Below, piece by piece: positions 1,611 through 60,496 of a stretch of 64,000 nt of DNA. This DNA comes from Isurus oxyrinchus (Eukaryota): positions 2,108,001-2,172,000 of the forward strand of contig JANJGN010000052.1 of NCBI GenBank assembly GCA_026770705.1. The letters run 5' to 3'. A program made the position numbers and the translations under genes. Numbering within the stretch: position 1 is the first letter of the stretch; each line of letters begins with the position of its first letter. The notes beneath the pieces are model-generated. The model saw only the letters and a list, made by a program, of their open reading frames with translations, was not told where the DNA came from and did no database searches.

Positions 1611-2478
1611 GTAGTGGGGGATGTTTGTGACCATCAGTGTGGAAGGGTTAGGTTTACAGGTTACACAGACCAGACACACACCAACAGACACACACACACA
1701 TGTAAGCACGCACATTCACACGCACACGTGCACACACACAACACACACACGCACACACACATGCACACACACACACACACACGTAAGCACGCACATNNNN
1801 NNNNNNNNNNNNNNNNNNNNNNNNNNNNNNNNNNNNNNNNNNNNNNNNNNNNNNNNNNNNNNNNNNNNNNNNNNNNNNNNNNNNNNNNNNNNNNNNNNNN
1901 NNNNNNNNNNNNNNNNNNNNNNNNNNNNNNNNNNNNNNNNNNNNNNNNAATCACTTGTGCAGAAACACAAACACACACACACACACATACACACACACAA
2001 ACACACTCACTTGTACAGAAACACAAACACACACACACACATACACACATGAGTTCCCTCTCCTCTCTCAGTGCTGCACTGGAGTCTCGGTGTCAGCTCC
2101 GATTCTGTGCTGAAGGAAGGTAAACTCCAGATCAACAAGACCCTGAATTGGATGAGCAACCTCCTGAACAGAGAATTGTAGATTTACCCCTCAGTGCTCC
2201 ATCGATCAAATATAATTCATTGCCTGTCAAGCCCTTGGGGACATTCTGAGGATGTGAAAGGCTGTTTCTTTAAATCTGGATGGGCAGGGTCTCTGGTGGG
2301 AGAATGCTCCTGCAGTGTGACAGTTTACATAGGCAGTGCCCATTGTAAATGTGACATAGGAACTTATCTTGAGAGAGGGTGCCTAGAAATGCACACAGGC
2401 ATCAGTTACAGCGAGAAGATACAGGAAGTTTTGCTGTGCACTGTGTTTGCTCACATTAAAATCTTTATATATTTTTAG

Positions 2479-2760
2479 ATGCACCACAGAATCTCTCAAT
2501 TACTTCTCTTGATATGATTAACGCTTCATCGATCAATATAATTGAGGGGAATTCTGCAGTGATAATCTGCTCTGTCGAGAGCTTCCCAGCTTCTAACCTG
2601 ACGTGGCGACATCTTAATGTCCCAATGAACAGAACAAGTTCCAACAATGAGCTGTGGTTGGTGATTCCTCACGTTACATCCAGGGACACTGGAGACTATC
2701 AGTGTGTGGCAGAGAATGAACATGGAGCAGTGGAGGGGTTCATAACCATCACTGTGGAAC
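2479..2760 (+). CDS. Siglec/MAG-like gene A, C2-set Ig exon (gene 5' end lies upstream of the window)
   Basis: ttttag|AT...GAAC|gtgagt, 282 nt, phase 1-1; APQNLSITSLD...IICSVESFPASNLTW...DTGDYQCVAENEHG has the Ig Cys/Trp/DxGxYxC signature. Confidence 0.9.
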
Positions 2761-2779
2761 GTGAGTGTGGAGATACATT

Positions 2780-3088
2780 TGTTTGTTTGTTGTCTCTGTG
2801 GTCTCCGTGGAGCCATTGGGATCGTGTTGTTTTTAATCCAGTTTTCTTCAATCCTCGCTCAGTCCACGTTATCCACACACCCAATTTTTCCTCTCCCTTT
2901 CTGTTTTTGCTCTCAGTTTCTCCTTCAATGGTTGTCAGGACAAGGCTGTCAGGTCTTCGTTTCCAATCTCCGTACTTGACGAACTTTCTCTCTCTAACTG
3001 CCCTGAACAACCCTTTTAATTGCTGAACTTCTCCTCTTGATCTAAGCCACTCATTGGTCTTTCTGTCCATCCAGCTGATTCTGAGCAT
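2780..3088 (-). mobile_element. RTE-like LINE 3' fragment
   Basis: LRISWMDRKTNEWL...LVLTTIEG. Confidence 0.55.
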
Positions 3089-12223: not shown

Positions 12224-14320
12224 GGTGAGGTGAGAGTGACTGCCTTTGACATCAAGGCTGCATTTGACCGAGTGTGGCATCTAGGATCCCGAGTAAAACT
12301 GGAGTCAATGGGAATCAGGGGTGGTACGAAAGTATAATAATTTGCTTAATATTTTCCTGGTTTGTTGTAAACTAGGTTTATGGGTGTGAGTGTAGATGGG
12401 TCTGTCTGTGTGGTTTAATTACACCTGGAGTCAGGTAGACTGCAAGTTTGAGATTATCAAAAGAAGCTAGGTGTAGAAATGTACTTGAAATGCTAATGAG
12501 TGAACATGGAGGCTTTCTTTGCATGTGAGGTGAGAAAGAGAATTTTAATTTTTAGGTAAGTGAAGGGATTGTTTGGATTTCAAAGGGCTGTTGGTCTGTT
12601 TACAACGAGGCCGATATGCAAGGCAAAGGAGTGTGTTTATTTTTCCCAAAGGTTATTGACAACATTGGCAACATGAAAGTTTTTATATTATGGGAAATGT
12701 ATCATTCCAAAGACATATGGAACAATGAAATTTACATATCAAAGAGAGAGAAACATCAACAAAGGAGAATGAAAGGCTATGTTGGGGATCATGTAAAATC
12801 TAACAAGAGTGTGTGAATCAGCCTTGAAGAAGCCTCCAGGCATTTGTCCATAGGTCTGTTATGTTCAGTGACTGTCGTTCGAGAAAGCCATTTGGAAATC
12901 CACTCTCAAGTGTGTTCTGTGTTAACTTGCTGGTTCTGTTTTTAAATCTAAAATCTATTTTGGTTTATTGCCTAAAAGGAGTTTTACTGCTCACTTCCAG
13001 ACTTCCCAATGCCTGTCCACCATCTTCAAGGTTAATTAGGAAGTTTAGGATTTGTTATAGTAGTAACCGTATCCTTATGTGTGTGCTTTAAATCTTAAAT
13101 AAATATTAAAATTTAATTTTTAAGATCTCTAAATGTCTTGGTTGACACATTACTCCTGAATTCAGTGCACACATCTCATAATAAATACAAATCGCAAAAC
13201 TGTTGTGATAGTGTGACAAAGTTTCCCTTGTGGATTTGGTCCCCCGGCACACATCATCTACCACATCATAACAGAGGGAAAACTCTCCACTGGTTGGAGC
13301 CATACCCAGCACAAAGGAAGATAGTTGTGGTTGTTGGAGGTCAATCATCTCAGTTCCAGGACATCACTGCAGGAGTTACTCAGGGTAGTGTCCAAGGCCC
13401 AACCACCTTCAGCTGCTTCATCAATGACCTTCCTTCCATCATAAGGACAGAAGTGTGGATGTTCACTGATGATTGCACAATGTTCAGCACCATTCACGTC
13501 TCCTCAGATACTGAAGCAGTCCTTGTCCAAATGCAGCAAGACCTGGACAATATCCAGGCTTGGGCTGACAAGTGTCAGGCAATGACCATCTCCAATAAGA
13601 GAGAATCTAACCATCGCTCCTTGATGTTCAATGACATTACCACTGCTGAATGCCCCACTATCAACATCCTGGTGGTTACCATTGACCAGAAATTGTACTG
13701 GACTAGCCATAAAAATACTGTGGCTACAAGAGCAGGTCAGAGGCTGGGAATCATGCAGTGAGTAACTCACTCCAGACTCCCCAAAACCTGTCCACCGTCT
13801 TCAAGGCACAGGTCAGGAGTGTGATGGAAGACTCTCCACTTGCCTGGATGAGTGCAGCTCCAACAAGATTCAATAAACTCAACACCACTCAGGACAAAGC
13901 AGCCCCACTAGTTCGGCTCCCCATCCACAAACATTCACTCTCTGCACAACCGACACACAGTAGCAGCAGTGTGTACCAGCTACAAGGTGCACTGCAGGAA
14001 CTCACCAAAACTCCTTAGGCAGCACCTTCAAACACACGACCACTACCATCTCGAATTACAGGGCAGCAGATACATGGTAACACCACCACCTGGAAGTTAC
14101 CCTCCAAGTCACTCACTATCCTGACTTGGAAATATATCGGCCGTTCCTTCACAGTCACTGGGTCCTAATCCTGGAACACCCTCCCTAACAGCATTGTGGG
14201 TGTACCTACACCACATAGACTGCAACAGTTCAAGAAGGCAGCTCATTACCATATTCTCACGGGCTATTAGGGATGGGCAATAATTCTGGCCTCGCCAGTT
14301 CCGTCCATATCCCATAAATG
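12224..14320 (+). mobile_element. LINE RT and 3' end (HER1/CR1-like) interrupted by a solo-LTR-like element at 12322-13273
   Basis: ITAGVTQGSVQGPTTFSCFINDLP...FTDDCT RT motifs; LINE sequence resumes across a TG...CATAACA insert. Confidence 0.8.
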
Positions 14321-16315: not shown

Positions 16316-18225
16316 NNNNNNNNNNNNNNNNNNNNNNNNNNNNNNNNNNNNNNNNNNNNNNNNNNNNNNNNNNNNNNNNNNNNNNNNNNNNNNNNNNNNN
16401 NNNNNNNNNNNNNNNNNNNNNNNNNNNNNNNNNNNNNNNNNNNNNNNNNNNNNNNNNNNNNNNNNNNNNNNNNNNNNNNNNNNNNNNNNNNNNNNNNNNN
16501 NNNNNNNNNNNNNNNNNNNNNNNNNNNNNNNNNNNNNNNNNNNNNNNNNNNNNNNNNNNNNNNNNNNNNNNNNNNNNNNNNNNNNNNNNNNNNNNNNNNN
16601 NNNNNNNNNNNNNNNNNNNNNNNNNNNNNNNNNNNNNNNACACTCACATACACACATAGACACACACACACACATACACAAACACACATACACACGCTCA
16701 CACTCTTACAGACAGACACAAACACACTTACATTCTCATATTCACACATTCACACACACATTCACTCACACACGTGCACAAATACAAACACAAAGACAAT
16801 ATCCCAATGACAGCAAACTGCGATTAAGAGCTTCCTACAACTGAACTAACAGACCAAAGACATATTGTACTGTCTAAAAGTGACCTGTTTTTCAAAGAAA
16901 TACAAGATTGTACACAGATCAAAAATGGCTGACACAAGTCATCTGATTGCTGATACTGTGAAGTTGATCACTTCTCTGGAAAGGTTCAAATGAATTGCAC
17001 TGCAGACCTGTTGCATGGAAGGTCACGCCTGGGGTGTGTCAGGGTGCACTTCAAACAGGGACACTCTTAAAAGGAAGGCATTAAAATGCAAAGTGCTGGA
17101 CTTTGATCAGCTGTGGTTCTATCAAAACAGTGGGAACTGCTCACCAAGCGGATAATCATCAGCCATTCAAAACCCCCTCTGGAGGATACAATACCCCCAT
17201 CTCCTGTTGATTTATATCTTGAAATGCATCAAATGTTTTGGAGATGCAAAGATAAAAAATGGGAGTACTTGGCCTTTAACAATATCTGAAGCTAACAGAG
17301 TGTCTTCAACAACGTGAAAATCTGAGCCAGATGAAATACAGGATTCTACAGCAAACCAACTAATTTAAAACAGCTTCAAACTTCACAGCCTACGCTGCAG
17401 TATAAGCTAACAACTCTTTTAATTTTTTATTGGACTCCATAATNNNNNNNNNNNNNNNNNNNNNNNNNNNNNNNNNNNNNNNNNNNNNNNNNNNNNNNNN
17501 NNNNNNNNNNNNNNNNNNNNNNNNNNNNNNNNNNNNNNNNNNNNNNNNNNNNNNNNNNNNNNNNNNNNNNNNNNNNNNNNNNNNNNNNNNNNNNNNNNNN
17601 NNNNNNNNNNNNNNNNNNNNNNNNNNNNNNNNNNNNNNNNNNNNNNNNNNNNNNNNNNNNNNNNNNNNNNNNNNNNNNNNNNNNNNNNNNNNNNNNNNNN
17701 NNNNNNNNNNNNNNNNNNNNNNNNNNNNNNNNNNNNNNNNNTTTCTCCAGTTAGGTAACGAGTAAAATAACTCTTTCTTTGACTCAACCGAACGTGGTTT
17801 AATTGTTTTGGAAATTGCATTTGGGGGAAAATATATTTTAAAACCCTTTTTTGTGACCAACCATGGGGTTTGAATAGAAAGGGAGCCAGTTCACTCCCCG
17901 TCAACCANNNNNNNNNNNNNNNNNNNNNNNNNNNNNNNNNNNNNNNNNNNNNNNNNNNNNNNNNNNNNNNNNNNNNNNNNNNNNNNNNNNNNNNNNNNNN
18001 NNNNNNNNNNNNNNNNNNNNNNNNNNNNNNNNNNNNNNNNNNNNNNNNNNNNNNNNNNNNNNNNNNNNNNNNNNNNNNNNNNNNNNNNNNNNNNNNNNNN
18101 NNNNNNNNNNNNNNNNNNNNNNNNNNNNNNNNNNNNNNNNNNNNNNNNNNNNNNNNNNNNNNNNNNNNNNNNNNNNNNNNNNNNNNNNNNNNNNNNNNNN
18201 NNNNNNNNNNNNNNNNNNNNNNNNN
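16316..18225. other. Assembly gaps (16316-16639, 17444-17741, 17908-18225; also 1797-1948 and 21522-21676)
   Basis: Runs of N. Confidence 1.
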
Positions 18226-21290: not shown

Positions 21291-21899
21291 TGGGGAGAGT
21301 CTGTCTGCGTTTTGAGCTGTAACCTTGAGACGGTCTCAAACCCCAACATTCCGTCTCAGAGACAGAAAGAGTGTGTGAGTGTGTGGGAGAGAAAGACAAT
21401 GTGTGGGAGAGAGTGAGAGTGTGTTTGTGTGAGAGAGAGAAGGAGAGAGAGAAAGAGAAAATGTGCATGTATGTGTGTGTGTGAGTTTGTGTGTGAGCGT
21501 GTGTTTGTATGCGTGTGCATANNNNNNNNNNNNNNNNNNNNNNNNNNNNNNNNNNNNNNNNNNNNNNNNNNNNNNNNNNNNNNNNNNNNNNNNNNNNNNN
21601 NNNNNNNNNNNNNNNNNNNNNNNNNNNNNNNNNNNNNNNNNNNNNNNNNNNNNNNNNNNNNNNNNNNNNNNNNNNNACAGTTATACAGGTTGCTAGGGAC
21701 CACTTTTCCGCCTCTCTGTCAGACTGTGTGTATCTGACAGCAGGTCAGGCAGAAATAGTCCAGAATGCACTGTGGTTTTGTAGCATTGAAACAACGACAT
21801 GAACTAAATGAGTGCTGCACCAAATAAAGACATGGAGTGACCACACCAAAAAACCACGTGACTTCCCCAGTTTCACATCTCCCTCAAACACAGAAAAAC

Positions 21900-25109: not shown

Positions 25110-25155
25110 ATGGGAGAGGTCGGTCTGATACTGATCTTCATCAGCTTGCTGCAAG
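25110..25155 (+). CDS. Siglec-like gene B signal peptide exon
   Basis: MGEVGLILIFISLLQ-G|gtacaa, phase 1; acceptor tttag just upstream. Confidence 0.85.
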
Positions 25156-25975
25156 GTACAAATTCATTACTGATCGGAACTCAGGGAATTGGATTCTTTC
25201 CTGGAGTGAGGAAGTGAACATTTAATTTTAGAGAAAAGGGTTAGTGATCACACAGAGAGTGAGTGAATAGCGAGTCAGAGAATTTAGCAAAAGCAAAAGT
25301 CTCATACGGACTCGAAACACCAACTCTGTTTCTCTCTCCACAGATGCTGTCAGACCGGCTGAGTTTTTCCAGCATTTTCTGTTTGTGCATCAGAGAGCTT
25401 GTTTCAATAGGAATGACAGTGCATTTATATAGCACCTTTAATGCAGTAAAACATCCTTATTGCTTCACAGGATTCCCCCACAAGGGGTAACATCCCCTCA
25501 GCATCCACCCTGTCAAACCCCCCACCACCTCAGAATCTTATATGTTTCAATAAGATCACCTCTCATTCTTCTAAACTCCAATGGATACAGGGCCCAACCT
25601 GCTCAACATTTCCTCATAAGACAAACCCCCTTCATCCCAGGAATCAGCCCAGTGATCCTCCTCTGAGCTGCCTCCAATGCAGAGTCTATCCCTCCCTAAG
25701 TAAGGAGACCAGAACTCTACACACTGCTCCTGATACAATCTCACCAACGCCCTGTACAGTTGTAGCAAGACTTCCCTCCTTTTATACTCCATCCCTTTGC
25801 AATAAAGGCCAACATTCCACTTGCCTTCCTCATTCCGTGCTGTTCCTGAATGCTGACTTTCTGTGATTCATGTACAAGGACACCCAGATCCCTCTGTACC
25901 GCATTCTGCTGCCTCTCTCCATTGAAGTAATATTCTGCTTTTTGATGTCCTGTCTCTTCCCTTGTTGCCTTTCAG

Positions 25976-26332
25976 GAGTGACGTCAGAGGGATGGTCTAT
26001 GAAGGCGCTGTCTCGGAGGGCCATCAGCAGCTCTTGTGTGGTTATTCCGTGTAGCTTTGACTTTCCTTCCCACTCTTACACAGCACTGCACGGAGCTTGG
26101 TATAAATATTGGTATAGATGGAAATATACCATCACATACACCAAAGATCCCAACTATGCGATGGCCACATTCGTGGGACGTGCTAAAATAATCGGCGACT
26201 TGGAAGGGAAGAATTGTTCGGTGAGGATTGACAGTCTCAGAGCTGAAGATAGTGATGTGTATTACTTTTATGTGGATGTGGAGGGCTACACAGATCACAC
26301 TTTTACACAACCAGTCCAACTCCAGGTTCTTG
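25976..26332 (+). CDS. Gene B Siglec-type V-set Ig exon (essential Arg replaced by Tyr)
   Basis: ttcag|GA...CTTG|gtaagt, 357 nt; SCVVIPCSF...GAWY...FVGRAKIIGDLEGKNCSVRI...EDSDVYYFYV; Siglec B- and E-strand Cys present, no F-strand Cys. Confidence 0.92.
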
Positions 26333-27439
26333 GTAAGTCCCAGTTCCTTTCACACTCAGTCTATCAGCACAAGGGGGTCATGTTCTCATCTCAGAGCCAG
26401 GCAGTCATGGGTTGAATTCCTGCTCCAGGAGATGTCAGAACAAAGTCCAGTATGTGATCTGGTGCAGTACTGAGGGAGTTCCACACTGTCAGAGGGTCAG
26501 TACTGAGGGAGTGCTGCACTGTCGGAGGGTCAGTACTGAGCGAGTGCCACACTGTCAGAGCATCAGTACTGCGGGAGTGCTGCACTGTCGGACGGTCAGT
26601 ACTGAGGGAGTGCTACACTGTCGGAGGGTGAGTACTGAGGGAGTGCTGCACTGTCACCGGGTCAGTACTGATGGAGTGCTGTACTGTCGGAGGGTCAGTA
26701 CAGGGGGAGTTCTGCACTGTCGGAGGGTGAGTACCGAGGGGGTGCTGCACCTTTGGGGGGTCAGTATTGAGGGAGTGCTGCACCGTTGGGGGGTCTTTGC
26801 CGAGTGAGTGCTGCTCTGTCTGAGAATTATCACTTGTATCAAAATGTTTTTAACTTTACTGTTGTTCCCACTTCAGCTGCAACTGCTCCACATCCCCATG
26901 TGTTAACTGGAGCATGTCAGCCTGGAGTTACGTGGAATTGCAGAGCAGAATCTGCTCTCACACATTGAAGCTGGCAATCGCTAAGTGTCCCTCAGTGATG
27001 ATGTTTTCTGATGGAATGAAACTTGGCAAAGCCGTGGGTAGTGATAAGGAGAGATTGGGCATGAGAGGGGCAGGATCAGTGTGAGGTGGGCAGACACATG
27101 GCTGATGCAGTTCAGCGCAGTGTCGTGTGAAGTGACGCACTTTGTCAGGATGAATACAGACAGATATTGGACAGTAATGATTTGGACAGGTGTAGGTGAG
27201 CAGAGACCTGGGCGTCTCTCTGCACTCATTCTGAAAGATTAAAGGACAAATTGTTGAGGTGATGAAGAAAGAAAATGTCTTCCTTGTGTTAACAGACTGA
27301 GGAACCCAGTTAAAAGCAAAGAGATCATGCGGGAACTTTATAAATCACTGGTTAGAACTCAGCTGGAATATTGTTCAGAACGCTGGGCCTCCACACTTCA
27401 GGAAAGATGTAAGAGCTTCAGAAAGGGTGTCCAAGAGGA

Positions 27440-44992: not shown

Positions 44993-45366
44993 TTGGACTG
45001 TCACAAGAGTGGAAAGGTGACACTCCACGAGAGGTGACAGCACAGGAAGGTTCATGTGTACAGATTCCATGTCATTACAGTTACTTATCAAATTTCGTAG
45101 GGAGATCACGTGCAGAATCTGGTTGAAAGGAATAGATGGGAACCCACAGCCGAAATGGTCTATAGCCTTTCACTCCGAGGGTCACAATCACAGGGATCAA
45201 AGATTCCGCCATCGTACCCGGCTGTCTGGAGACCTGAAAGATGGCGACTGTTCCCTGATTATAAACAACATCAGACGGGAAGATGCAGGACCTTATTTTT
45301 TCAGAATAGAGTTTGACAGCAGGAATAGTTACAGCTACTATCCTGTAACCCAGCTTGACGTTTCTG
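44993..45366 (+). pseudogene. Gene C V-set exon with intact sialic-acid-binding Arg
   Basis: GLSQEWKGDTPREVTAQEGSCVQIPCHYSY / frameshift / IWLKG...FRHRTRLSGDLKDGDCSLIINNIRREDAGPYFFRIEFDSRNSYSY; 374 nt (3n-1), donor G|gtaagt. Confidence 0.85.
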
Positions 45367-45889
45367 GTAAGTGCTGTGTTATAATTACTCAACAATTCAC
45401 ATCCAACACTCAATGGGAAATAACACAAACTGTGACGTTTACATAATAACACAAAACACAGCTTATTATAACACACTGTCTGATTCTCAATAACCTGGTG
45501 ATAGCTTCCAGTTCAGTCCTAAAGCAACCTCTAAAAATCACTTTAATATCAATGATGAAAAGCATTAACTGTACCGACATCTTTCATTCTACATCAGCAC
45601 TCCCTCAGCACTGACCCTCTGACAGTGCAGCCTGTTCTCAGTATCCACATTCTCAGGCCACTCAAAGTGCTTCACAGTCGATAGAAGTTAATTGATCTTT
45701 ATATGATTATTGCTGAATGAAGAGACAAGCTGTCTAAACTTCTCATATCGCAAACAGCATTCTCCACGGCAACACCTCCACCTATCAGAGACCACTTGCC
45801 AACCAATCAGCACTGTCTTTCCATTAAGTATAAATTGTTGTTCACTTTCTGTTGGTAATCGTGCAAACGGGGTTCTTGATTCCTGCCAT

Positions 45890-52870: not shown

Positions 52871-54509
52871 TGTGACATCTGGAATGCGAAGCTAGTCTCA
52901 GTAATGGTGACCATGAAACTAAGGCCAACTGTTGCAAAAACCCATCTGGGTCACTAATGCCCTTTGGGGAAGGAAACCTGCCGTCCTTACCCATTCTGGC
53001 CTACGTGTGACTCCTGACCCACAGCAATGTGGTTGACTCTTAACTGGCCCCTGAAATGGCCGAGCAAGCCACTGAGTTATATCAAAACCCGCCACAGACC
53101 AGTCAAACCAGGTGAACTGCAGCACTTCGAAAAGGCAGCTCAGCACCCCCTTCTCCAGGGCTCAGTCTGGAACAGGTAACAAACGCTGTCCACATCCCGT
53201 GAAAGAATTTTGGTAAAAAGGTAACGTGTATCACCACCCACGGCCAGCGCCAACCCCCCCACCCCTACCTGATTGCACCAGTTTCAGATGACACCAGGTC
53301 AATGAACGGATAGAAACCCAAACCAATGAGATGAGCACAGAGAAGGATCAAGCCGGAGAGAGTTGGTGGGAAGAATTGGGAAAGCAACAAAAAAGGCAGA
53401 GCGGACACTAACACTATAACAAAGTAAAGACCAGAGGAGGAAGGAAGCAAGTGCGAAGAGGAATTGAGAGTAGAGCTGGTAGGCTGCTTGTCGAAGCCAA
53501 GGACCCTCCATAGGTCACACCCACAGTGCTGTTGGGGAGGGAGTTACATGATTTTGACCCAGGATCATCAAGTTTTGCACTGGCAGAGCCTTTAAAGAAA
53601 GGGGACCTTCACTACCCGTGTCCCCCGCCCAACAAAGCTGTTGAAATGCCGAGTCCACCTGTACAGGCAACCTCCAGACAGTTGACTACAAAGGCCATTG
53701 CAGCTGCTGAATATGACTTCCAGTTTCAAAACCTTCATGAATACAAGGATGGGGGATTCAGCAGGAATATTCCTGCACATCCTGTGGCAGATCCTGTAAA
53801 TAAAAGGGACCTTCACTCACTCCTCAAAGCTGCTGACCTGCTGATTCATATCTACAGGCAACCTCCAAACAGTCGACTAGAGAAGACAATGCAGCTGCTG
53901 AATGTGACTCCTAGTTTCAAACCCTTCACTCTGGAAAGAAGGAATCCAGAGCAATGGGCCTCACTATGATACTTGACAGAAACTGATTTTAACTCTCATC
54001 TCTAAGTATTATTTTTCCTTTGCTTACATTTTAATCCCTGCACCTGATGGCTTTATCGCTTCAACTTAAATAACTTTCAGCAGGAGCCAGGTTCAAATTG
54101 AATGGACAAGCAGGCTTGGGGGGCCAAAAGGCCTACTCCTGCTTCTGTTTATTTATGTTTGTGTTGTTATGTAGTGGAACTAGAGAGGTTATAGCAGTTA
54201 TGAGAGCATTAAGCAAACAGCAGCAAGAATTGAACACCTACGTTGTGGTTTATGAAAAGGTTTTCAACCTGGTCAACTGGTAAAATCTGTTGAAAGTGGG
54301 CTATCATGGCGTGTGCCCTTTGTGAGATATTTGTAACAACGTTCTCGATGTCGGAACAGTTTGCATTGAACAAAGCTGATCTTTACCCTGAACTTCAGAG
54401 GAAGGGGGGACAATTGTTCCCTGGTGTGGGGGGCATGGTGGGGGGGAGGGTGAGGGGGAGACAAGTAGCCTGAAATACCAAGCCAGACACTTTGTGAAGA
54501 CAAAAGTTC

Positions 54510-54515
54510 TTTATT
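54510..54515 (-). terminator. Probable polyadenylation signal of the hepcidin-like gene
   Basis: AATAAA on the - strand about 830 nt after the stop, followed by a U/GU-rich stretch. Confidence 0.5.
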
Positions 54516-55346
54516 CATTTTTTTTTACAAATCATAATCTTTACAATTAAAGTCCCGACAAGATGATGGTGAATCATGAACACATTGTCGGGGTGAATCT
54601 GTGCCCGGGAGCAGAAAGCAGCAAAATCAGGAGCCCGCTTTACATCTCTCTGAATTTTAACTATCATTAACCCCAGTAACATCCATTCAAATGACTTAGT
54701 CATAAGATTCCTCACACATTCACTTGCACACTCACACACCCACACCCACACAGAGACACAGACACACTCACTCATTCACATTGACATACACTGACAGTCA
54801 CACACACCCACACAGACACACTGACACACTCACTCATTCACATTGACACACACTGACACAGTCACACACACCCACACAGACACACTGACACACTCACTCA
54901 TTCACATTGACACACACTGACACAGTCACACACACCCACACAGACACACTGACACACTCACTCATTCACATTGACACACACATATTGACAGTCACACACA
55001 TACACACACACACACGCTCATAAAGACAGACACAAACACAGTCACGTGAGGTGAATAGTGTCGATGTATTTAAGGGGGAGCTGGATAAACACACGAGGGA
55101 GAAATGAATAGAAGGATATGGTGATGGGGTGAGATGGAGAAGGGGTGGGCGGAGACTCGTGTGGAGCAGAAACACCAGCATGGAGCAGATGGGCCGAATG
55201 GCTTCTTTCCCTGCTGTAAAACGCAGGTAAAGTTTCAGTTGGAATTAATGAACAGGGCCTGTGTTAAATAGATTGCTAAGCAGTAGATAAGGAGGGGAGA
55301 GGCTGTGGCATGGTGCAGGATGACCTTGCGTGAATGAGGCCAGGGT

Positions 55347-55463
55347 CTAAAATATGCAGCAGATACCACAAGTCTCATTTGATTCTCTCCAATTACAGCA
55401 GTGACAGCAGAATCTGCAGTGCCGCTGTCTGCTCATTCTGTTCTGGCGCTGCAGCAAGGAGCC
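55347..55463 (-). CDS. hamp: Hepcidin-like gene exon 3 (cleavage site and 8-Cys mature peptide)
   Basis: Minus strand cttttccag|GGC...; GSLLQRQNR MSRQRHCRFCCHCCNWRESNETCGICCIF*; C-x2-CC-x-CC-xn-C-G-x-CC-x2-stop is the hepcidin pattern. Confidence 0.92.
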   Translation of the reverse strand, partial: GSLLQRQNRMSRQRHCRFCCHCCNWRESNETCGICCIF

Positions 55464-55549
55464 CTGGAAAAGCAGGAGGACAATAGGTGAGAACATTCCG
55501 GAAAGAAAGAAGGCATCATTTCAATCAGGCGCGTCATTGGAAGGAGGAT

Positions 55550-55930
55550 GGCGCATTTCTATAGCGCCTTTCCCCTCCTCAGGATGGCCCAAAGTGTTCC
55601 ACAGCTGAAGGAAGGACTTTTTCTGAAGTGAGCTCACCGCTGTAATGTAGGAAACGCAGCAGGCAATTCACGCACAGCAAGATCCCACAAACAGAAATGT
55701 GATAATGGCCCCGATTTTCAGTTTTTTACCAATGTCAGTTGAGGGATAAATGTTTGCCCCAGGAAAGCGGACATAACTGCATCCCATCCACCCCCCACCA
55801 CCCCCTCCACACATACCCCCAACTCCTGACGCACTTCATTTAAATTGTGGCCATGGAATCCTCTATATCCACCTGAGAGGGCAGATGTTGTCTCAGTTTA
55901 ATATCTCATCTGAAAGACAGCGCCTTCAAC
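55550..55930 (-). mobile_element. SINE (DeuSINE-like); further copies near 5840-5990, 15150-15295, 22140-22410, 57930-58230
   Basis: Recurrent core gtaatgtaggaaacgcagcag...cacagcaagatcccacaaacagcaatgtga; family name is from recall. Confidence 0.6.
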
Positions 55931-57773
55931 AGTGCAGCACCCCCTCAGTACTGACCCTCCGACTGTGCAGCACTCCCTCAGTACTGACCGTCTGACAATG
56001 CAGCACCCCCTCAGTACTGACCCTCCAACAGTGCAGCACTCCCTCAGTACTGGCCGTCTGACAATGCAGCACCCCCTCAGTACTGACCCTCCGACTGTGC
56101 AGTCCCCCGCCGGTACTGACCCTCTGACAGTGCAGCACTCCAAGACTGACCGTCTGACAATGCAGCACGCCCTCAGTACTGACCCTCCGACTGTCCTGCC
56201 CCCCCGCCGGTACTGACCCTCCGACAGCTCGGTAATTTCTCAATTATGCCTGGTGGTCCTTTTAACTCAGAGCTGAGAGTTGCAGAGAATCGAGCACACA
56301 TCCTGAACTGACACTTGCAGTGCAAGTACTGGGAGCGCGCTGGTCATTATCATGCTGCTGTCTGTGGGATCTTACTGTGCGCCAATGGCTGATTCTTTTC
56401 CCACAGTACATCAGTGACCTCACATGAAAGAAAAAAAGCACTTGATTGTCCGCGAAACAGTTTGGGACGTCCTGATGTGTTGGAAGGCGCTAGAGAAATG
56501 CAAGTCCTCTTTGTCTTTCACTCGATCCTCTAAGGTGTCTGTTGATTAACCAGCCTCTCGGTGTTTGATGTAGGCCTGGTTATAAACAGTTAGAAGGATC
56601 AAATATCAAAAGTGCTTTGGCTGACAGTCAAACCGATTGTGCATTCGGAGAGATTAGATATGGTCTGCACACAATGACTCCAGTCTCTGGCACTGACTGC
56701 CGCCTGGGGTCTCCCTTCCACATAACACTCACAACTTGCATTTACACAGCGCCTCTGACATTGAAAAATGTCCCAGCCCACATTACCGGAGCGTAAATCA
56801 GAGAGAAGTCTAACACTGAGTCACATATGGAGATATTAGGGTTAGGTGACCAAAAGCTTGGTCAAAGATGTCAGTTTTTAAGGAGCGTCTTAAAGGAGAG
56901 AGAGAGAGAAAGAGACAGAGGCAGAGAGGTTAAGGGAGGGTATTCCGGAGCTCAGGGCCCCAGGCAATTGAAGGCACGGCCACCAATGGTGGAGCGATGG
57001 GAATCAGGGGGACCCGGGAGATGCAGTAATGTCAGAGATTTTGGAGGAACATCGGGACCGGAGGAGGTGTTCTCCTGCTCCATATCTCTCTCTCTCTTCC
57101 TCTCATCCACTCCTCCTCTCCCTGTCTCTCTCTCTCCTACTCTTCCTCTCAATTGCCCTCTCTCCCAATCTTTCTCTCCTCTCTCCCTTTTCCTGTCTCT
57201 CTCCCTCTCTCTCTCCCTGTCTCATTCTCCCACTCTGTATCTCTCCCTCTCTCTCACACTATTTTTGTAACTTTCGCTCACTCTGTAACTCTCCCTTTCC
57301 TGTTAATTTCTCTCTCTTGGACAATCTCTCTTCCCTTTTCACTTTCCCTCACTCTGCATCTCTTCTTTAATTTCTCCCTCTGTCACTCTCTCCCACCTAT
57401 GTTCTTTCCCTTTCACCCCTCCCCGTCCCACTCTCTGTCTCTCTCTTCCAATCCCTCCCTCCCCCATTCCATCCCTCTCTCCGACTCTCGACTCCCAGCC
57501 TCTCTTTAACCCACTCCCAGGCTGGATCAGTCTCCCTCTCACTATTCCCGGCGTGGGTTACATTTAAAATTCCTGTGGGTATATGTTCACTTCCTTGGAA
57601 TTGTCTCTTCCCAGCTTTGCAAAAAAAGGGGTGGCGGGGGGGTTCGATTTCAAACATGCCTCCTGAGTATAACCGAGACAGACTGCCACTGAAATCAGCT
57701 TGAAATCAGAAAACTTTCTGTGGAAGAAACGAGCAGGGAGAAACCTTAAAATAAGGAATGAATTTCCACCTAC

Positions 57774-57830
57774 CGTGTCCGGGGAATCCACAGATTTCTC
57801 AATCGTCGAAGAACCTAAAGCAGTGTCAAC
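57774..57830 (-). CDS. hamp: Hepcidin-like gene exon 2 (prodomain)
   Basis: Minus strand ctttttgcag|GTT...ACG|gtaggt, 57 nt, open only in phase 0: VDTALGSSTIEKSVDSPDT. Confidence 0.8.
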
Positions 57831-58549
57831 CTGCAAAAAGAAAGAATTTATCAGGGAGAAAGTGAGAGGAGGATTGAGGGAGAGGGAGAGAGAGAGAGAG
57901 AGGTACAGGAGAGAGAGGGGGAGGAGGACAGACTTGCATTTCTCTAACGCCTTTCACCACATCCCAAAGCATTTCACAGCCACTGAAGGATGTTTTTGAA
58001 GTGCACTCACACTGTAGGAAATGTGGCAGCTGATTTGTGCACAGCAAGATCCCACAAATAGCAATGTGATCATGGCCTAGATCATCTGTTTTTGGTGATG
58101 TTGGTTGAGGGATAAATATTGGTCCCAGGACACCGGGGAGAACACCCCCTGCTCTTCCTCCAAATAGTGGCTGTGGGATCTTTCACACCCGCCCGAGAGG
58201 GCAGACGGGGGACTCGGTTTAATGTCTCATTCAACATTGTTGCGCTCCCTCAGTATTAACCCTTTGACACTGCAGCACTCCCTTAGTATTAACCCTTCGA
58301 TAGTGCTGCGCTCCCTCAGTACTGTCCCTCCGTCAGTGCAGCTCTATTTCAGTACTAACCCTTCGACACAGCAGCACTCCCTCAGTACTGACCTCCGACA
58401 GTATAGCACTCCCTCAGTACTGTCCCTCCAATAGTGCAACACTTCCACACTACTGACCCTCTGAGAGTGCAGCACTCCCTCAGCACGGAGCGTTGATCTA
58501 CATTATGGGACTGAATTCCCTGGAGTGAGACTCAGACCAGTGATTTAGG

Positions 58550-59920
58550 TAGGGTTGTGGGGGCTGGAGGAGGTTACAGAGATAGGGAGGGTTGTGGGGG
58601 CTGGAGGAGGTTACAGAGATAGGGAGGGCTGTAGAGGCTGTAGGAGGTTACAGAGAAAGGGAGGGTTGTAAGGGCTGTAGGAAGTTACAGAGATAGGGAG
58701 GGTTGTAGAGGCTGTAGGAGGTTACAGAGATAGGGAGGGTTGTAGGGGCTGGAGGAGGTTACAGAGATAGGGAGGGTTGTAGGGGCTGGAGGAGGTTACA
58801 GAAATAGGGAGGGTTGTAGGGGCTGGACGAGGTTACAGAGATAGGGAGGGTTGTAGGGGCTGGAGGAGGTTACAGAAATAGGGAGGGCTGTAGAGGCTGT
58901 AGGAGGTTACAGAGATGGGGGAGTTGTGGGGGCTGGAGGAGGTTACAGAACTAGGGAGGTGTGTAGGGGCTGTAGGAGGTTACAGAGATGGGGTGGTTGT
59001 GGGGGCTGGAGGAGGTTACAGATGTAGGGAGGGTTGTAGAGGCTGGAGGAGGTTACCAAAATAGACACTGCTGTAGGGGCCACAGTAGATTACAGAGATA
59101 GGGAGAGTTATAGTGTGGAGAGGAGGTTATAGAGTTCAGGAGGATTGTAGGGGCTGGAGGAGGTTACAGTGATTGTGAGGGTTGTGGGGCCTGGAGGATT
59201 TTACAGAGATAGGGAGGGTTGTAGGGTCTGGAGCAGGTTACAGAGATAGGGAGGGTTGTAGGGTCTGGAGCAGTTTACAGAGATAGGGAGGGTTGTAAGG
59301 TCTGGAGCAGGTTACAGAGAGAGGGAGGGTTGTAGGGTCTGGAGGAGGTTACAGTGATCGTGAGGGTTGTGGGGCCTGGGGGAGGTTACAGAGATAGGGA
59401 GTGTTGTGGGGACTGTAGGAGGTTACATAGATAGGGAGGGTTGTCGGGTCTGGAGGAGGTTACAGAGATAGGGAGGGTTATAGGGACTGGAGGAGGTTAC
59501 AGAGATAGGGAGGGTTGTCGAGACTGTAGGATGTTACAGAGATAGGGATTGTTGTAGGGGCTGGAGGATGTTACAGAGATAGGGAGGGTTGTAGGGGCTG
59601 GAGGAGGTTACAGAGATAGGGAGGGTTGTAGGGGCTGGAGGAGGTTACAGAGATAGGGAGGGTTGTACGGGCTGGAGGAGGTTACAGAGATAGGGAGGGT
59701 TGTAGGGGCTGGAGGAAGTTACAGAGATAGGGAGGGTTGTAGGGGCTGGAGGAGGTTACAGAGATAGGGAGGTTTGTAGGGGCTGGAGGAGGTTACAGAG
59801 ATAGGGAGGGTTGTAAGGCCTGGTGGAGGTTACAGAGATAGGGAGGGTTGTAGGGGCTGGAGGAGTTTACAGAGATAGGGAGGGTTGTACGGGCTGGAGG
59901 AGGTTACAGAGATAGGGAGT
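58550..59920. repeat. 37-bp minisatellite in hepcidin-like intron 1
   Basis: gggagggttgtaggggctggaggaggttacagagata. Confidence 0.95.
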
Positions 59921-60120
59921 CGCTGAGGAGGGATTGAAAACAAGAATGAGAATTTCAGGGGAAATGACAGAAGGAAATGATGTTAAATTCATAGAGGGCG
60001 ACAATATTAAAGGCACGAACACAATAATATCAAACTGCGGAAGAGACCAGTCTATCTGGGTGGTAGACGTAGAGTCATGTGCAAGAAACACGTCACCCAG
60101 AGGGACATCTCTTAGCTTAA

Positions 60121-60213
60121 CCTCGACAAGGAGAAGAAGTGACTCAGCTGCAGGGAGAGCAGCAAAGTCAGAGTGAACAAGACAAGTCGCCATTTCATCT
60201 GGGAGCTTCCCAT
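60121..60213 (-). CDS. hamp: Hepcidin-like gene exon 1 (signal peptide); donor is 1 nt out of phase as assembled
   Basis: MGSSQMKWRLVLFTLTLLLSLQLSHFFSLSR, followed by ttaagc; TATA box about 70 nt upstream of the ATG. Confidence 0.78.
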
Positions 60214-60282
60214 CTCTGCCTGTCTCTTCTGATCTTCTGGCTCTGCTTTGATGCTTTGGTTTGTAACTAGAGGAGCTTCCTG

Positions 60283-60496
60283 CTCTTATACCTGAAACAC
60301 TTGAAGGGGACAGCCGCGGGTGGGTAGCTGTGTGGTATCACACCCATTTCTGGATATTGCAGTGTCGATGTTCCCTGTCCCACTGGCCTGGGACCAGCAG
60401 TAAGGTCACTGGGACATTGACTGTCTGGCGCCGAGAACTATCAGTCCCTCCGCAACGCCCTTCACCTTGTGCAAATATGTGTTCATATTGACGCAA
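60283..60496 (-). promoter_or_regulatory. Hepcidin-like proximal promoter
   Basis: TATAAGAG 60290-60283 (-); degenerate STAT-like TTCTGGATA 60348-60356; GTCT+GGCGCC 60423-60432; C/EBP TTGTGCAA 60467-60474; TGACGCAA 60489-60496. Confidence 0.65.

What the first reader, a model, noticed from the sequence alone, without database searches (positions are those of the whole stretch)
55347..60213. Hidden three-exon hepcidin-like gene next to a MAG/Siglec cluster
Seen: three small minus-strand exons with a signal peptide (MGSSQMKWRLVLFTLTLLLSLQLSH...), a 57-nt phase-0 prodomain exon, and a terminal exon GSLLQRQNR-MSRQRHCRFCCHCCNWRESNETCGICCIF*, plus TATA and polyA signals. The Cys-rich exon is absent from the ORF track. 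Known: hepcidin (HAMP) has this 8-Cys spacing and a three-exon layout, and human HAMP lies beside MAG and CD22. Inference: this is a hepcidin family member in conserved synteny in a probable cartilaginous fish, and easy for annotation pipelines to miss.
Basis: partly seen in the sequence, partly recalled or inferred. Interest (0 to 1): 0.9.

Follow-up and report, generated by a model that had tools for sequence, protein, structure and literature searches.

The report
Expressed long-loop hepcidin gene copy
This is a real three-exon gene of the hepcidin (iron-hormone and defence peptide) family lying among Siglec immune-receptor genes. Matching spliced RNA is very abundant, but the peptide is an unusual long-loop form, and in this assembly the reading frame survives only if the first intron is cut at a rare TT instead of GT.

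Summary
The minus strand carries exon 1 (ATG 60213, signal peptide), a 57-nt exon 2 (57830-57774) and a Cys-rich exon 3 (55463-55347).

- **Family:** the exon 3 peptide passes Pfam's Hepcidin cut-off (29.3 bits against 27, E 1.1e-6).
- **Expression:** Exon depth is 100 to 1000 times intron depth.
- **Neighbours:** they are MAG/Siglec-like, as around HAMP in human and mouse.

Three caveats.

1. Canonical GT-AG splicing of intron 1 gives 92+57+117 nt, which is out of frame and stops in exon 2. The RNA carries one more G, so here the intron reads TT..AG at a G|TTAAG donor, a known rare natural class. I could not tell whether this is real TT splicing, a crippled copy whose RNA comes from sister copies, or a one-base assembly or allele difference.
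2. The peptide is atypical. It has an 8-residue hairpin loop (4-5 is usual) with an NET sequon, and it lacks the DTHFPI/QSHLSL ferroportin-binding start. It is more likely a defence-type copy than the iron hormone.
3. It is not unique. This scan has already reported the same kind of gene on other DNA of this genome, including copies described as one G short.

No close relative was found in the protein databases searched.

The parts
60285..60290 (-). TATA-like box (TATAAG), 77 nt upstream of the ATG
   Evidence: Motif scan and sequence. The transcription start itself was not mapped, because contigs cannot show starts.
60427..60432 (.). GGCGCC palindrome 219 nt upstream of the ATG, a candidate BMP-responsive element (a lead only)
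   Evidence: It is one of only 2 GGCGCC sites in 64 kb, where 1.9 are expected. That the human HAMP BMP-RE is GGCGCC is my own knowledge and was not tested here.
60121..60213 (-). Coding part of exon 1 as used in the RNA (93 nt): 31 residues with the signal peptide. The canonical GT would end it at 60122 (92 nt).
   Evidence: Sequence and translation. The main joint is 57830|60121, at depth 10270 in X1 and 25037 in X2.
57831..60120 (-). Intron 1 as removed in the RNA: TT..AG with donor context AGG|TTAAGC. The equally fitting alternative is GT..CA, shifted by one base. It contains a 37-nt minisatellite (58546-59919) and SINE-like repeats.
   Evidence: The joint row reads 'skips 2290, CT..AA, both 1'. 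The G|TTAAG class of TT donors is described in PMC6280755.
57774..57830 (-). Exon 2: 57 nt, phase 0, 19 residues of pro-region
   Evidence: with joints on both sides.
55464..57773 (-). Intron 2, canonical GT..AG, with a minor alternative acceptor at 56575
   Evidence: The joint 55462/57773 reads 'CT..AC (cut +1)' and is seen in X1 and X2. The variant joint 55464/57776 is seen in X1-X3. The joint 56574/57773 is minor.
55347..55463 (-). Coding part of exon 3: convertase motifs RQNR and RMSR, then the 8-Cys hepcidin domain (HCRFCCHCC, loop NWRESNET, CGICCIF) and the TAG stop
   Evidence: Pfam PF06446 scores 29.3 bits against a cut-off of 27. Bass hepcidin 1s6w aligns with a 3-residue gap in the loop.
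54500..55346 (-). 3' UTR of about 850 nt, with a TG-rich 64-nt repeat block (54737-55015) and AATAAA at 54515-54510
   Evidence: Depth stays at 10^5 down to 54500, and an adapter-tagged contig end lies at 54502. Sequence is and repeats.

Best explanation
This is a genuine copy of a hepcidin-family (HAMP, Pfam PF06446) gene, embedded in a cluster of Siglec/MAG-like genes.

**Layout (shown).** The layout is the classical one. Exon 1 encodes the signal peptide, a short exon 2 the pro-region, and exon 3 the convertase sites plus the whole 8-cysteine peptide.

**Expression (shown).** Transcripts with exactly these exon junctions are extremely abundant in one animal's RNA. They match this copy's exons almost perfectly: one fixed difference in about 1 kb of exon 3 and 3' UTR, and none listed in exon 1.

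**How it works (inferred).** The 88-residue precursor is secreted. A furin-type convertase cuts it after RQNR or RMSR, leaving a 29- or 26-residue peptide. That peptide folds into the four-disulfide hepcidin hairpin. The hairpin loop is doubled to 8 residues and carries an N-glycosylation sequon (NET).

**Likely role (inferred).** The peptide lacks the N-terminal DTHFPI/QSHLSL-type segment that iron-regulatory hepcidins use on ferroportin. Its CRFCC core resembles teleost HAMP2-type peptides. It belongs to an expanded gene family. I therefore take it for a host-defence-type or otherwise specialised copy, not the iron hormone.

**Unresolved for this copy.** The reading frame is kept only if intron 1 is cut between G60121 and T60120, a G|TTAAG-type TT donor. 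So this copy either uses that rare donor or is one base away from being productive.
For: - **Family:** Pfam Hepcidin hit above the gathering score, E 1.1e-6. The same cysteine order and spacing as bass hepcidin 1s6w, apart from the loop. This is the only such cysteine pattern in the window.
- **Expression:**, X1 depth is 360,000-795,000 over exon 3 and the nearby UTR, 55,000-85,000 in the exon 2 bins and 276,000 in the exon 1 bin. Unique intron bins show about 650-2,700.
- **Splicing:** joints 57774|55463 (GT..AG) and 60121|57830 appear in X1-X3.
- **Match to this copy:** exon contigs match it at 99.9% or better. Intron contigs match at about 99.4% by my count (about 15 differences listed over roughly 2.5 kb of intron).
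- **Peptide features:** signal-peptide profile, RXXR sites, NET sequon and net charge of +1 to +2.
- **Neighbours:** Siglec/MAG-like. Mammalian gene order is given.
- **More than one copy:** a contig splices a 1-mismatch copy of the Siglec leader exon (window 25110-25155, + strand) to hepcidin exon 2. It must come from another locus. Earlier scan notes say the same.
- **TT donors exist:** G|TTAAG TT donors are a documented natural class.
Against: - Canonical GT(60121)-AG(57831) splicing of this copy gives 92+57+117 nt and a stop five codons into exon 2.
- With near-identical copies in the genome, the contigs cannot be assigned to this locus.
- All the expression evidence comes from one sample (X1 = X2 = X3). 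X5, from another study, shows none. That the runs are RNA is the tool's guess, although the splice joints show it.
- Function is untested. The net charge of 0 to +2 is not strongly antimicrobial-like.
- The AlphaFold model without an alignment came out helical and matched nothing in the PDB search, so the fold is not confirmed.
Confidence: 0.8

Rival explanations
1. This copy is a crippled or dead duplicate. Its exon 1 donor has suffered a G-to-T change at +1 (AGG|GTAAGC to AGG|TTAAGC) or a one-G deletion. The abundant in-frame RNA comes from sister copies with a canonical donor. This copy, if transcribed, yields a frameshifted message that encodes little more than the signal peptide.
For: - 92+57+117 = 266 nt is not a multiple of 3, and a stop follows in exon 2.
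- Most GT-to-TT donor changes disrupt splicing (PMC6280755).
- Contigs laid at 95% identity or more cannot be assigned to a copy.
- The family includes truncated and chimeric members according to earlier notes and my chimeric contig.
Against: - The rest of the gene is flawless and 99.9% or more identical to the expressed RNA in its exons.
- The two-G (frameshifted) junction reaches only depth 70 against 10,270. That is no more than the 1-nt-deletion noise contigs at the canonical junction 2, which reach 55-57.
- Two other copies are described with the same one-base shortfall (not tested here). That is odd for a random lesion, unless the lesion was itself duplicated.
Confidence: 0.4
2. Intron 1 is a genuine TT-AG intron. 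The spliceosome cuts between G60121 and T60120 at a G|TTAAG-type donor, so the copy, and perhaps the whole family, is productive exactly as assembled.
For: - The donor AGG|TTAAGC fits the '..G TTAAG' pattern of the natural human TT donors in FBXO9 and ETV1, and of the partly functional FANCC c.165+1G>T site.
- TT is the second most used non-canonical donor dinucleotide after GC (PMC6280755).
- The three-G junction dominates by more than 100-fold, and the RNA matches this copy's exons.
- No other insertion or deletion separates the RNA from the assembly in about 1.2 kb of exons and UTR (table 4).
- Other copies are reported with the same feature (not tested here).
Against: - Non-GT, non-GC donors are very rare.
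- In reporter assays, accurate +1 cutting needed a second GT at +5/+6. This site has GC there.
- No unspliced contig across 60120 was shown, and no DNA reads of the RNA animal were laid, so the animal that gave the RNA may carry a G there.
Confidence: 0.35
3. The locus is intact, and the missing G (or the T at 60120) is an assembly or consensus error, or an allele private to the assembled individual.
For: - The RNA has one more G than canonical splicing of the assembly would give.
- Near-identical repeated copies are hard to polish.
- A context-specific consensus error would recur in sister copies, which matches the earlier notes.
Against: - No other insertion or deletion between RNA and assembly is listed in the exons and UTR, despite many homopolymers (table 4).
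- A G-to-T substitution error is unlikely on any sequencing platform.
Confidence: 0.25
4. The peptide is this animal's iron-regulatory hormone, a ferroportin ligand, and not a defence-type paralogue.
For: - Very high expression, typical of liver HAMP.
- A GGCGCC motif 219 nt upstream of the ATG, like the BMP-responsive element of human HAMP (the human element is my own knowledge).
- Cleavage after RQNR would leave six residues before the first cysteine, the same length as in human hepcidin-25.
- The ferroportin cysteine that binds hepcidin first appears in cartilaginous fish (PMC8235187).
Against: - The residues before the first cysteine (MSRQRH or QRH) share nothing beyond a histidine with DTHFPI or QSHLSL.
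- The doubled loop with a possible glycan is unprecedented among hepcidins known to me.
- The gene is multi-copy.
Confidence: 0.15

Closest known systems
Mammalian HAMP (hepcidin-25; human HAMP, mouse Hamp/Hamp2)
   Same: It belongs to the same Pfam family. The layout is the same three exons, with signal peptide, pro-region and a basic convertase site before an 8-Cys peptide. The cysteine spacing C-x2-CC-x-CC...C-x2-CC-x2 matches. It has MAG/CD22-type Siglec neighbours.
   Different: - The loop between the second CC pair and the sixth Cys has 8 residues (NWRESNET, with an NET sequon) instead of 4.
- There is no DTHFPI ferroportin-binding start.
- The gene is convergent with the neighbouring Siglec genes and lies inside the cluster, not between USF2 and MAG.
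- It is multi-copy.
- Its first intron begins with TT in the assembly.
Teleost HAMP2-type (antimicrobial) hepcidins, e.g. hybrid striped bass hepcidin, PDB 1S6W
   Same: The CRFCC-x-CC core and the ...CG-x-CC-x-F end align residue for residue. The N-terminus is short and non-hormone-like. By my own knowledge of teleost HAMP2, those genes are also present in several copies.
   Different: - The loop has 8 residues against 5.
- It carries a glycosylation sequon.
- The expansion is independent, in a different vertebrate lineage.
- No antimicrobial activity was tested.
- The phmmer E-value against the PDB is only 1.3, because the peptide is so short.
Nurse shark plasma hepcidin (PMC9207270)
   Same: It shows that a hepcidin is made and circulates in a shark, and that it had no orthologue in an annotated shark gene set (whale shark). 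That is the same point about annotation missing the gene.
   Different: Whether it is the long-loop or the standard type is therefore unknown.
Natural G|TTAAG TT 5' splice sites (human FBXO9, ETV1; FANCC c.165+1G>T)
   Same: The donor context AGG|TTAAGC has G at -1 and TTAAG at +1 to +5. The RNA junction corresponds to cutting in the +1 (TT) register.
   Different: This site has GC, not GT, at +5/+6. Use of the TT donor by this very copy is not demonstrated.

Membership tests
Hepcidin family (Pfam PF06446) | Profile-HMM match above the curated gathering score | tested here: met
   29.3 bits against a cut-off of 27, E 1.1e-6. Residues 5-38 of the exon 3 peptide match profile positions 24-53 of 53.
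Hepcidin family (Pfam PF06446) | Eight cysteines in the order C-x2-CC-x-CC-loop-C-x2-CC near the C-terminus | tested here: met
   The number, order and all spacings match, except that the loop has 8 residues instead of 4-5.
Hepcidin family (Pfam PF06446) | Three-exon gene with the whole mature peptide in the last exon, joined in transcripts | tested here: met
   Joints 60121|57830 and 57774|55463 are seen in the contigs of X1-X3.
Hepcidin family (Pfam PF06446) | Signal peptide, pro-region and a basic convertase site (RXXR or RX[KR]R) just before the mature peptide | tested here: met
   The hydrophobic core reaches a Kyte-Doolittle mean of 2.5. RQNR and RMSR lie 6 and 3 residues before the first Cys. 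Cleavage itself is not shown.
Hepcidin family (Pfam PF06446) | Disulfide-bonded beta-hairpin fold | tested here: inconclusive
   AlphaFold2 without an alignment gave two helices at mean pLDDT 74.8. Foldseek against the PDB found no match. No homologues were available to build an alignment.
Intact, productive gene copy | Open reading frame kept across canonical GT-AG (or GC-AG) introns | tested here: not met
   Intron 2 is GT..AG. For intron 1, the canonical GT gives 92 nt and a stop in exon 2, and the frame-keeping cut is TT..AG.
Iron-regulatory hepcidin (HAMP / HAMP1 type) | N-terminal ferroportin-binding segment of the DTHFPI or QSHLSL type before the first cysteine | tested here: not met
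The predicted N-termini are MSRQRH or QRH.
Iron-regulatory hepcidin (HAMP / HAMP1 type) | Liver expression that responds to iron/BMP and inflammation | not testable with these tools
   The runs are coded and their tissue is unknown. Expression is very high in one sample and absent in X5. The GGCGCC at -219 is only a lead.
HAMP locus orthology | Conserved neighbourhood USF2 - HAMP - MAG - CD22 | tested here: inconclusive
   MAG/Siglec-like V-set exons are present, and the mammalian order is documented. No USF2, LSR or FFAR was seen in the window, and the gene's orientation to the Siglec genes is convergent.

The most novel reading that the evidence does not exclude
The whole long-loop hepcidin family of this animal is productive as assembled. 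One of the most abundant messages in the sampled tissue would then be made through a natural, accurate TT-AG intron at a G|TTAAG donor. Its product would be a hepcidin with a doubled, possibly N-glycosylated hairpin loop, amplified together with Siglec genes.
Probability: 0.3. Interest if true: 0.65.

Novelty: new variant of a known kind. Interest (0 to 1): 0.5.

Why it matters
Hepcidin is the master iron hormone of vertebrates and also a defence peptide. Its early history, in cartilaginous fishes, is almost undescribed in the open literature. The library searched held only a plasma-proteome mention.

A very highly expressed, multi-copy hepcidin form with a doubled loop, a glycosylation sequon and no ferroportin-binding start would show two things. 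The split between hormone-type and defence-type hepcidins arose more than once. The HAMP-Siglec neighbourhood is ancient.

The gene is invisible to ORF-based and homology-based annotation, so gene sets of such genomes probably under-count it. If the TT donor is real, it is also a rare natural case of a highly used non-canonical splice site. If it is not, this copy illustrates how a single base separates working and dead members of a young gene family.

Tried and rejected
- **phmmer against 1.84 billion representatives** with the 38-aa exon 3 peptide gave 0 hits at E <= 0.001. The query is too short for a library of that size, so this says nothing about novelty.
- **The search for homologous proteins**, run with the 49-aa ORF and with a 57-aa stop-free stretch (region 18-57), found no candidate sharing three 5-residue words. 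The third search was not spent.
- **ESM Atlas** gave only a 0.75-score plant cluster, which is meaningless.
- **AlphaFold2 on the single sequence** gave helices, and **Foldseek against the PDB** found nothing. I rejected this as uninformative, not as evidence against the fold.
- **Rfam and tRNA scans** of the window were empty.
- **The supplement of the nurse-shark proteome paper** holds no hepcidin entry.
- **The earlier-findings search by sequence** was blank.
- **Other ways to keep the frame** were considered and rejected:
  - Exon 1 joined directly to exon 3 gives a stop.
  - The weaker donor CTGA|GTCACT joined to the weak acceptor at 57814 is in frame, but no such joint is listed.
  - Starting at the third ATG (60193) with canonical splicing keeps the frame but gives no signal peptide.
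- **The two-G junction contig** (depth 70) was considered as this copy's own transcript. It is no more abundant than deletion-noise contigs at the canonical junction, so it proves nothing.
All searches were exon by exon, by reference.


Full report
**1. The observation**

- Exon 1: an ATG at 60213 opens a 31-residue stretch. It has a basic start and a leucine-rich core (11-residue Kyte-Doolittle mean up to 2.5), which is a typical signal peptide.
- Exon 2: a 57-nt block at 57830-57774 lies behind a long pyrimidine tract ending in GCAG and before GTAGGT. In phase 0 it encodes 19 polar residues.
- Exon 3: behind the acceptor TTTTCCAG, 55463-55347 encodes 38 residues and a TAG stop.
- Exon 3 content: overlapping RXXR motifs (RQNR, RMSR), then HCRFCCHCC, an 8-residue loop NWRESNET, and CGICCIF.
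- ORF track: the exon sits in a 49-aa ORF, below the default ORF length, so it was hidden from the ORF track.
- Signals: a TATAAG lies 77 nt upstream of the ATG. An AATAAA lies at 54515-54510, about 830 nt past the stop.

**2. Is it hepcidin?**

The exon 3 peptide scores 29.3 bits against Pfam PF06446 (Hepcidin). The curated cut-off is 27, and E is 1.1e-6. Against solved structures, the bass hepcidin 1S6W aligns over its whole length with identical cysteine positions and a 3-residue gap in the loop. The E-value of 1.3 is weak because the peptide is so short. A six-frame pattern scan finds this cysteine arrangement once in 64 kb. Exon 1 alone matches no family, and exon 2 is too short for the tool.

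Everything was done exon by exon, by reference.

**3. Is it spliced and expressed?**

One search for runs gave four small contig sets from one sample of 'organism A' (X1-X4). They hold 42-85% of the words of the last exon. Three of them, plus a run from another study (X5), were laid on 54500-60300.

Depth in X1:

| Region | Mean word depth |
|---|---|
| Exon 3 and nearby 3' UTR (55082-55469) | 360,000-795,000 |
| The two exon 2 bins | 55,000-85,000 |
| Exon 1 bin | 276,000 |
| Unique intron bins | about 650-2,700 |

X2 and X3 show the same contrast. The tool only guesses that these runs are RNA, but the exon-to-intron contrast and the splice joints show that they are.

- 57774 joined to 55463 removes a GT..AG intron.
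- 60121 joined to 57830 is the main form, at depth 10,270 in X1 and 25,037 in X2.

The transcript runs to about 54500. There an adapter-tagged contig end lies just past the AATAAA.

X5, from another study of the same organism, shows no exon depth, so expression is specific to a sample or tissue. All positive evidence comes from one sample.

A minor alternative acceptor at 56575 gives a truncated reading.

**4. The catch: intron 1**

From the ATG to the only GT at the exon 1 border (60121-60120) is 92 nt. Then 92+57+117 = 266 nt, which is not a multiple of three. Read that way, exon 2 gives R-LTLL-stop.

The RNA has three Gs at the junction (…CGAGG|GTTGAC…), one more than canonical splicing of this DNA would give. 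Laid on the assembly, the removed piece is therefore 60120-57831, TT..AG. The equally fitting alternative is GT..CA, one base over ('both 1').

The two-G junction that canonical splicing predicts is seen once, at depth 70. That is the same level as the 1-nt-deletion contigs at the canonical second junction (55-57), so it is indistinguishable from noise.

The donor context AGG|TTAAGC belongs to a known class. Erkelenz et al. 2018 (PMC6280755) make these points:
- Non-canonical donor use ranks GC > TT > AT > GA > GG > CT.
- The natural human TT donors of FBXO9 and ETV1, and the FANCC c.165+1G>T site, all have the pattern G|TTAAG.
- Such sites can be cut at the TT (+1), at the upstream GT (-1), or at both, depending on context.
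- Most GT-to-TT mutations are nevertheless disruptive.
- Accurate +1 cutting in their reporters needed GT at +5/+6. This site has GC there.

Three readings remain. My rough odds:
- About 0.40: a crippled duplicate, with the RNA coming from sister copies that have a GT donor.
- About 0.35: a genuine TT-AG intron.
- About 0.25: a one-base assembly or allelic difference.

Two points speak against a plain dead copy. Every other signal of the gene is flawless, and its exons are 99.9% or more identical to the dominant RNA. One point speaks against assembly error: no other insertion or deletion separates RNA and assembly in about 1.2 kb of exon and UTR (table 4).

**5. One of several copies**

The scan's earlier notes list many hepcidin findings in this genome. 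They are AI notes, and I use them only as leads.
- Two of the findings are on the same piece of the genome, 0.84 and 1.26 Mb before this window.
- Some are hepcidin-Siglec chimeras.
- Two copies are described as 'one G short of the reading frame seen in the RNA' and 'one base at its first splice site is wrong'.
- One note says the animal also expresses a standard-looking hepcidin.

My own data support multiplicity in one respect. Contigs of X2 and X3 join hepcidin exon 2 to a 30-nt sequence that matches, with one mismatch, the leader exon of a Siglec gene of this window. That exon lies at 25110-25155 on the opposite strand and ends in CAAG|GTAC. Such a transcript must come from another locus with a different arrangement. 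It is out of frame.

The RNA also carries non-synonymous variants:
- 57775: Thr to Met.
- 57829: Val to Gly.
- 55353: Ile to Met.

**6. Surroundings**

- V-set exons at 25870-26415 and 45054-45446 (+ strand) hit the Pfam V-set and CD22-like Ig models. The first matches MAG best among solved structures (5lfr, E 6.7e-15), followed by sialoadhesin and Siglec-5.
- An Ig exon lies at 2514-3026.
- Published gene lists give LSR, USF2, HAMP, MAG, CD22, FFAR1 for human 19q13.12, and Cd22, Mag, Hamp2, Hamp, Usf2, Lsr for mouse.

The neighbourhood is therefore conserved in kind. Here, however, the hepcidin gene lies inside the Siglec cluster and is convergent with the nearest Siglec genes. No USF2, LSR or FFAR-like ORF was found in the window.

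The species is coded and could not be named. The SINE-like repeats look elasmobranch to me from memory only.

**7. How it most likely works**

Shown: family membership of exon 3, the exon structure, and abundant spliced RNA.

Inferred:
- The precursor is secreted.
- A furin-type convertase cuts after RQNR or RMSR, giving a 29- or 26-residue peptide with net charge +2 or +1.
- The peptide forms a four-disulfide hairpin.

The loop is twice the usual length and holds an NET sequon, so the hairpin tip may carry a glycan. The segment before the first cysteine (MSRQRH or QRH) lacks the DTHFPI/QSHLSL-type residues that hormone-type hepcidins use on ferroportin. That motif definition is my own knowledge. 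Together with the CRFCC core shared with teleost HAMP2-type peptides and the multi-copy state, this points to a defence-type or otherwise specialised copy.

The hormone reading keeps about 0.15, for these reasons:
- Expression is huge.
- One of only two GGCGCC sites in the window lies 219 nt upstream of the ATG. This is the sequence of the human HAMP BMP-responsive element, which I know from memory and did not test here.
- Ferroportin's hepcidin-binding cysteine first appears in cartilaginous fish (PMC8235187).

**8. Novelty**

Neither the exhaustive HMMER search (the query is too short to reach significance) nor two word-indexed searches found anything. No protein of 31-99 aa shares three 5-residue words with exon 3.

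The open literature held here mentions shark hepcidin only as a plasma protein of the nurse shark that had no orthologue in the whale-shark gene set (PMC9207270).

The gene is a clear member of a known family, with an unusual peptide and an unusual first intron. I call it a new variant of a known kind. This scan has already reported it repeatedly on other DNA of the same genome, so this window adds one copy and the analysis of the TT donor.

**9. Verdict**

- Observation: confirmed.
- Interpretation: partly supported. It is a hepcidin family member, spliced as predicted and next to Siglec/MAG genes. But it is one copy of several, it is atypical, and it is not shown to be productive as assembled.
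- Interest: 0.5.

Noticed in passing
window 25110-25155 (+), and the loose ends at 57832: This is the leader exon of a Siglec gene. It starts at the ATG at 25110, encodes a hydrophobic signal peptide, and ends at the donor CAAG|GTAC. RNA contigs of X2 and X3 splice a 1-mismatch copy of it onto hepcidin exon 2. In this window the two lie on opposite strands, so the chimera must come from another locus. The join is out of frame.
   Followed up: partly
window 58546-59919: A 37-nt minisatellite of about 37 copies, 86% matches, fills most of intron 1 of the hepcidin gene.
   Followed up: no
window 55923-56227 and 58245-58483: SINE-like elements with internal 33-nt tandem repeats (CAGTACTGAGGGAGTGCTGCAC-type) lie in both introns. 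Their tails, such as 58060-58240, look like an elasmobranch SINE to me from memory only.
   Followed up: no
window 60427-60432 and 60467-60474: GGCGCC lies 219 nt upstream of the hepcidin ATG and occurs only twice in 64 kb. A C/EBP-like TTGCACAA lies at -261. Both are candidate liver/BMP control elements and were not tested.
   Followed up: partly
window 57775, 57829, 55353, 54614: The RNA contigs carry variants against the assembly. They change Thr to Met (57775), Val to Gly (57829) and Ile to Met (55353). A 3' UTR difference at 54614 is nearly fixed in the RNA. The three coding variants listed are all non-synonymous. They are either alleles or sister copies.
   Followed up: partly
window 56575: A minor alternative acceptor inside intron 2 is joined to the exon 2 donor (depth 844 in X1, 98 in X3). 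It leads to a stop after nine codons.
   Followed up: partly
window 54737-55015: A TG/CA-rich block with a 64-nt period (4.4 copies, 93% matches) lies inside the 3' UTR. The laying tool skipped it as a repeat.
   Followed up: no
window 13138-13761 (+): An ORF with a reverse-transcriptase domain (RVT_1, 32.7 bits), a retroelement fragment between the Siglec genes.
   Followed up: no
window 1797-1948, 16316-16639, 17444-17741, 17908-18225, 21522-21676: Five runs of N, 1247 bases in all.
   Followed up: no
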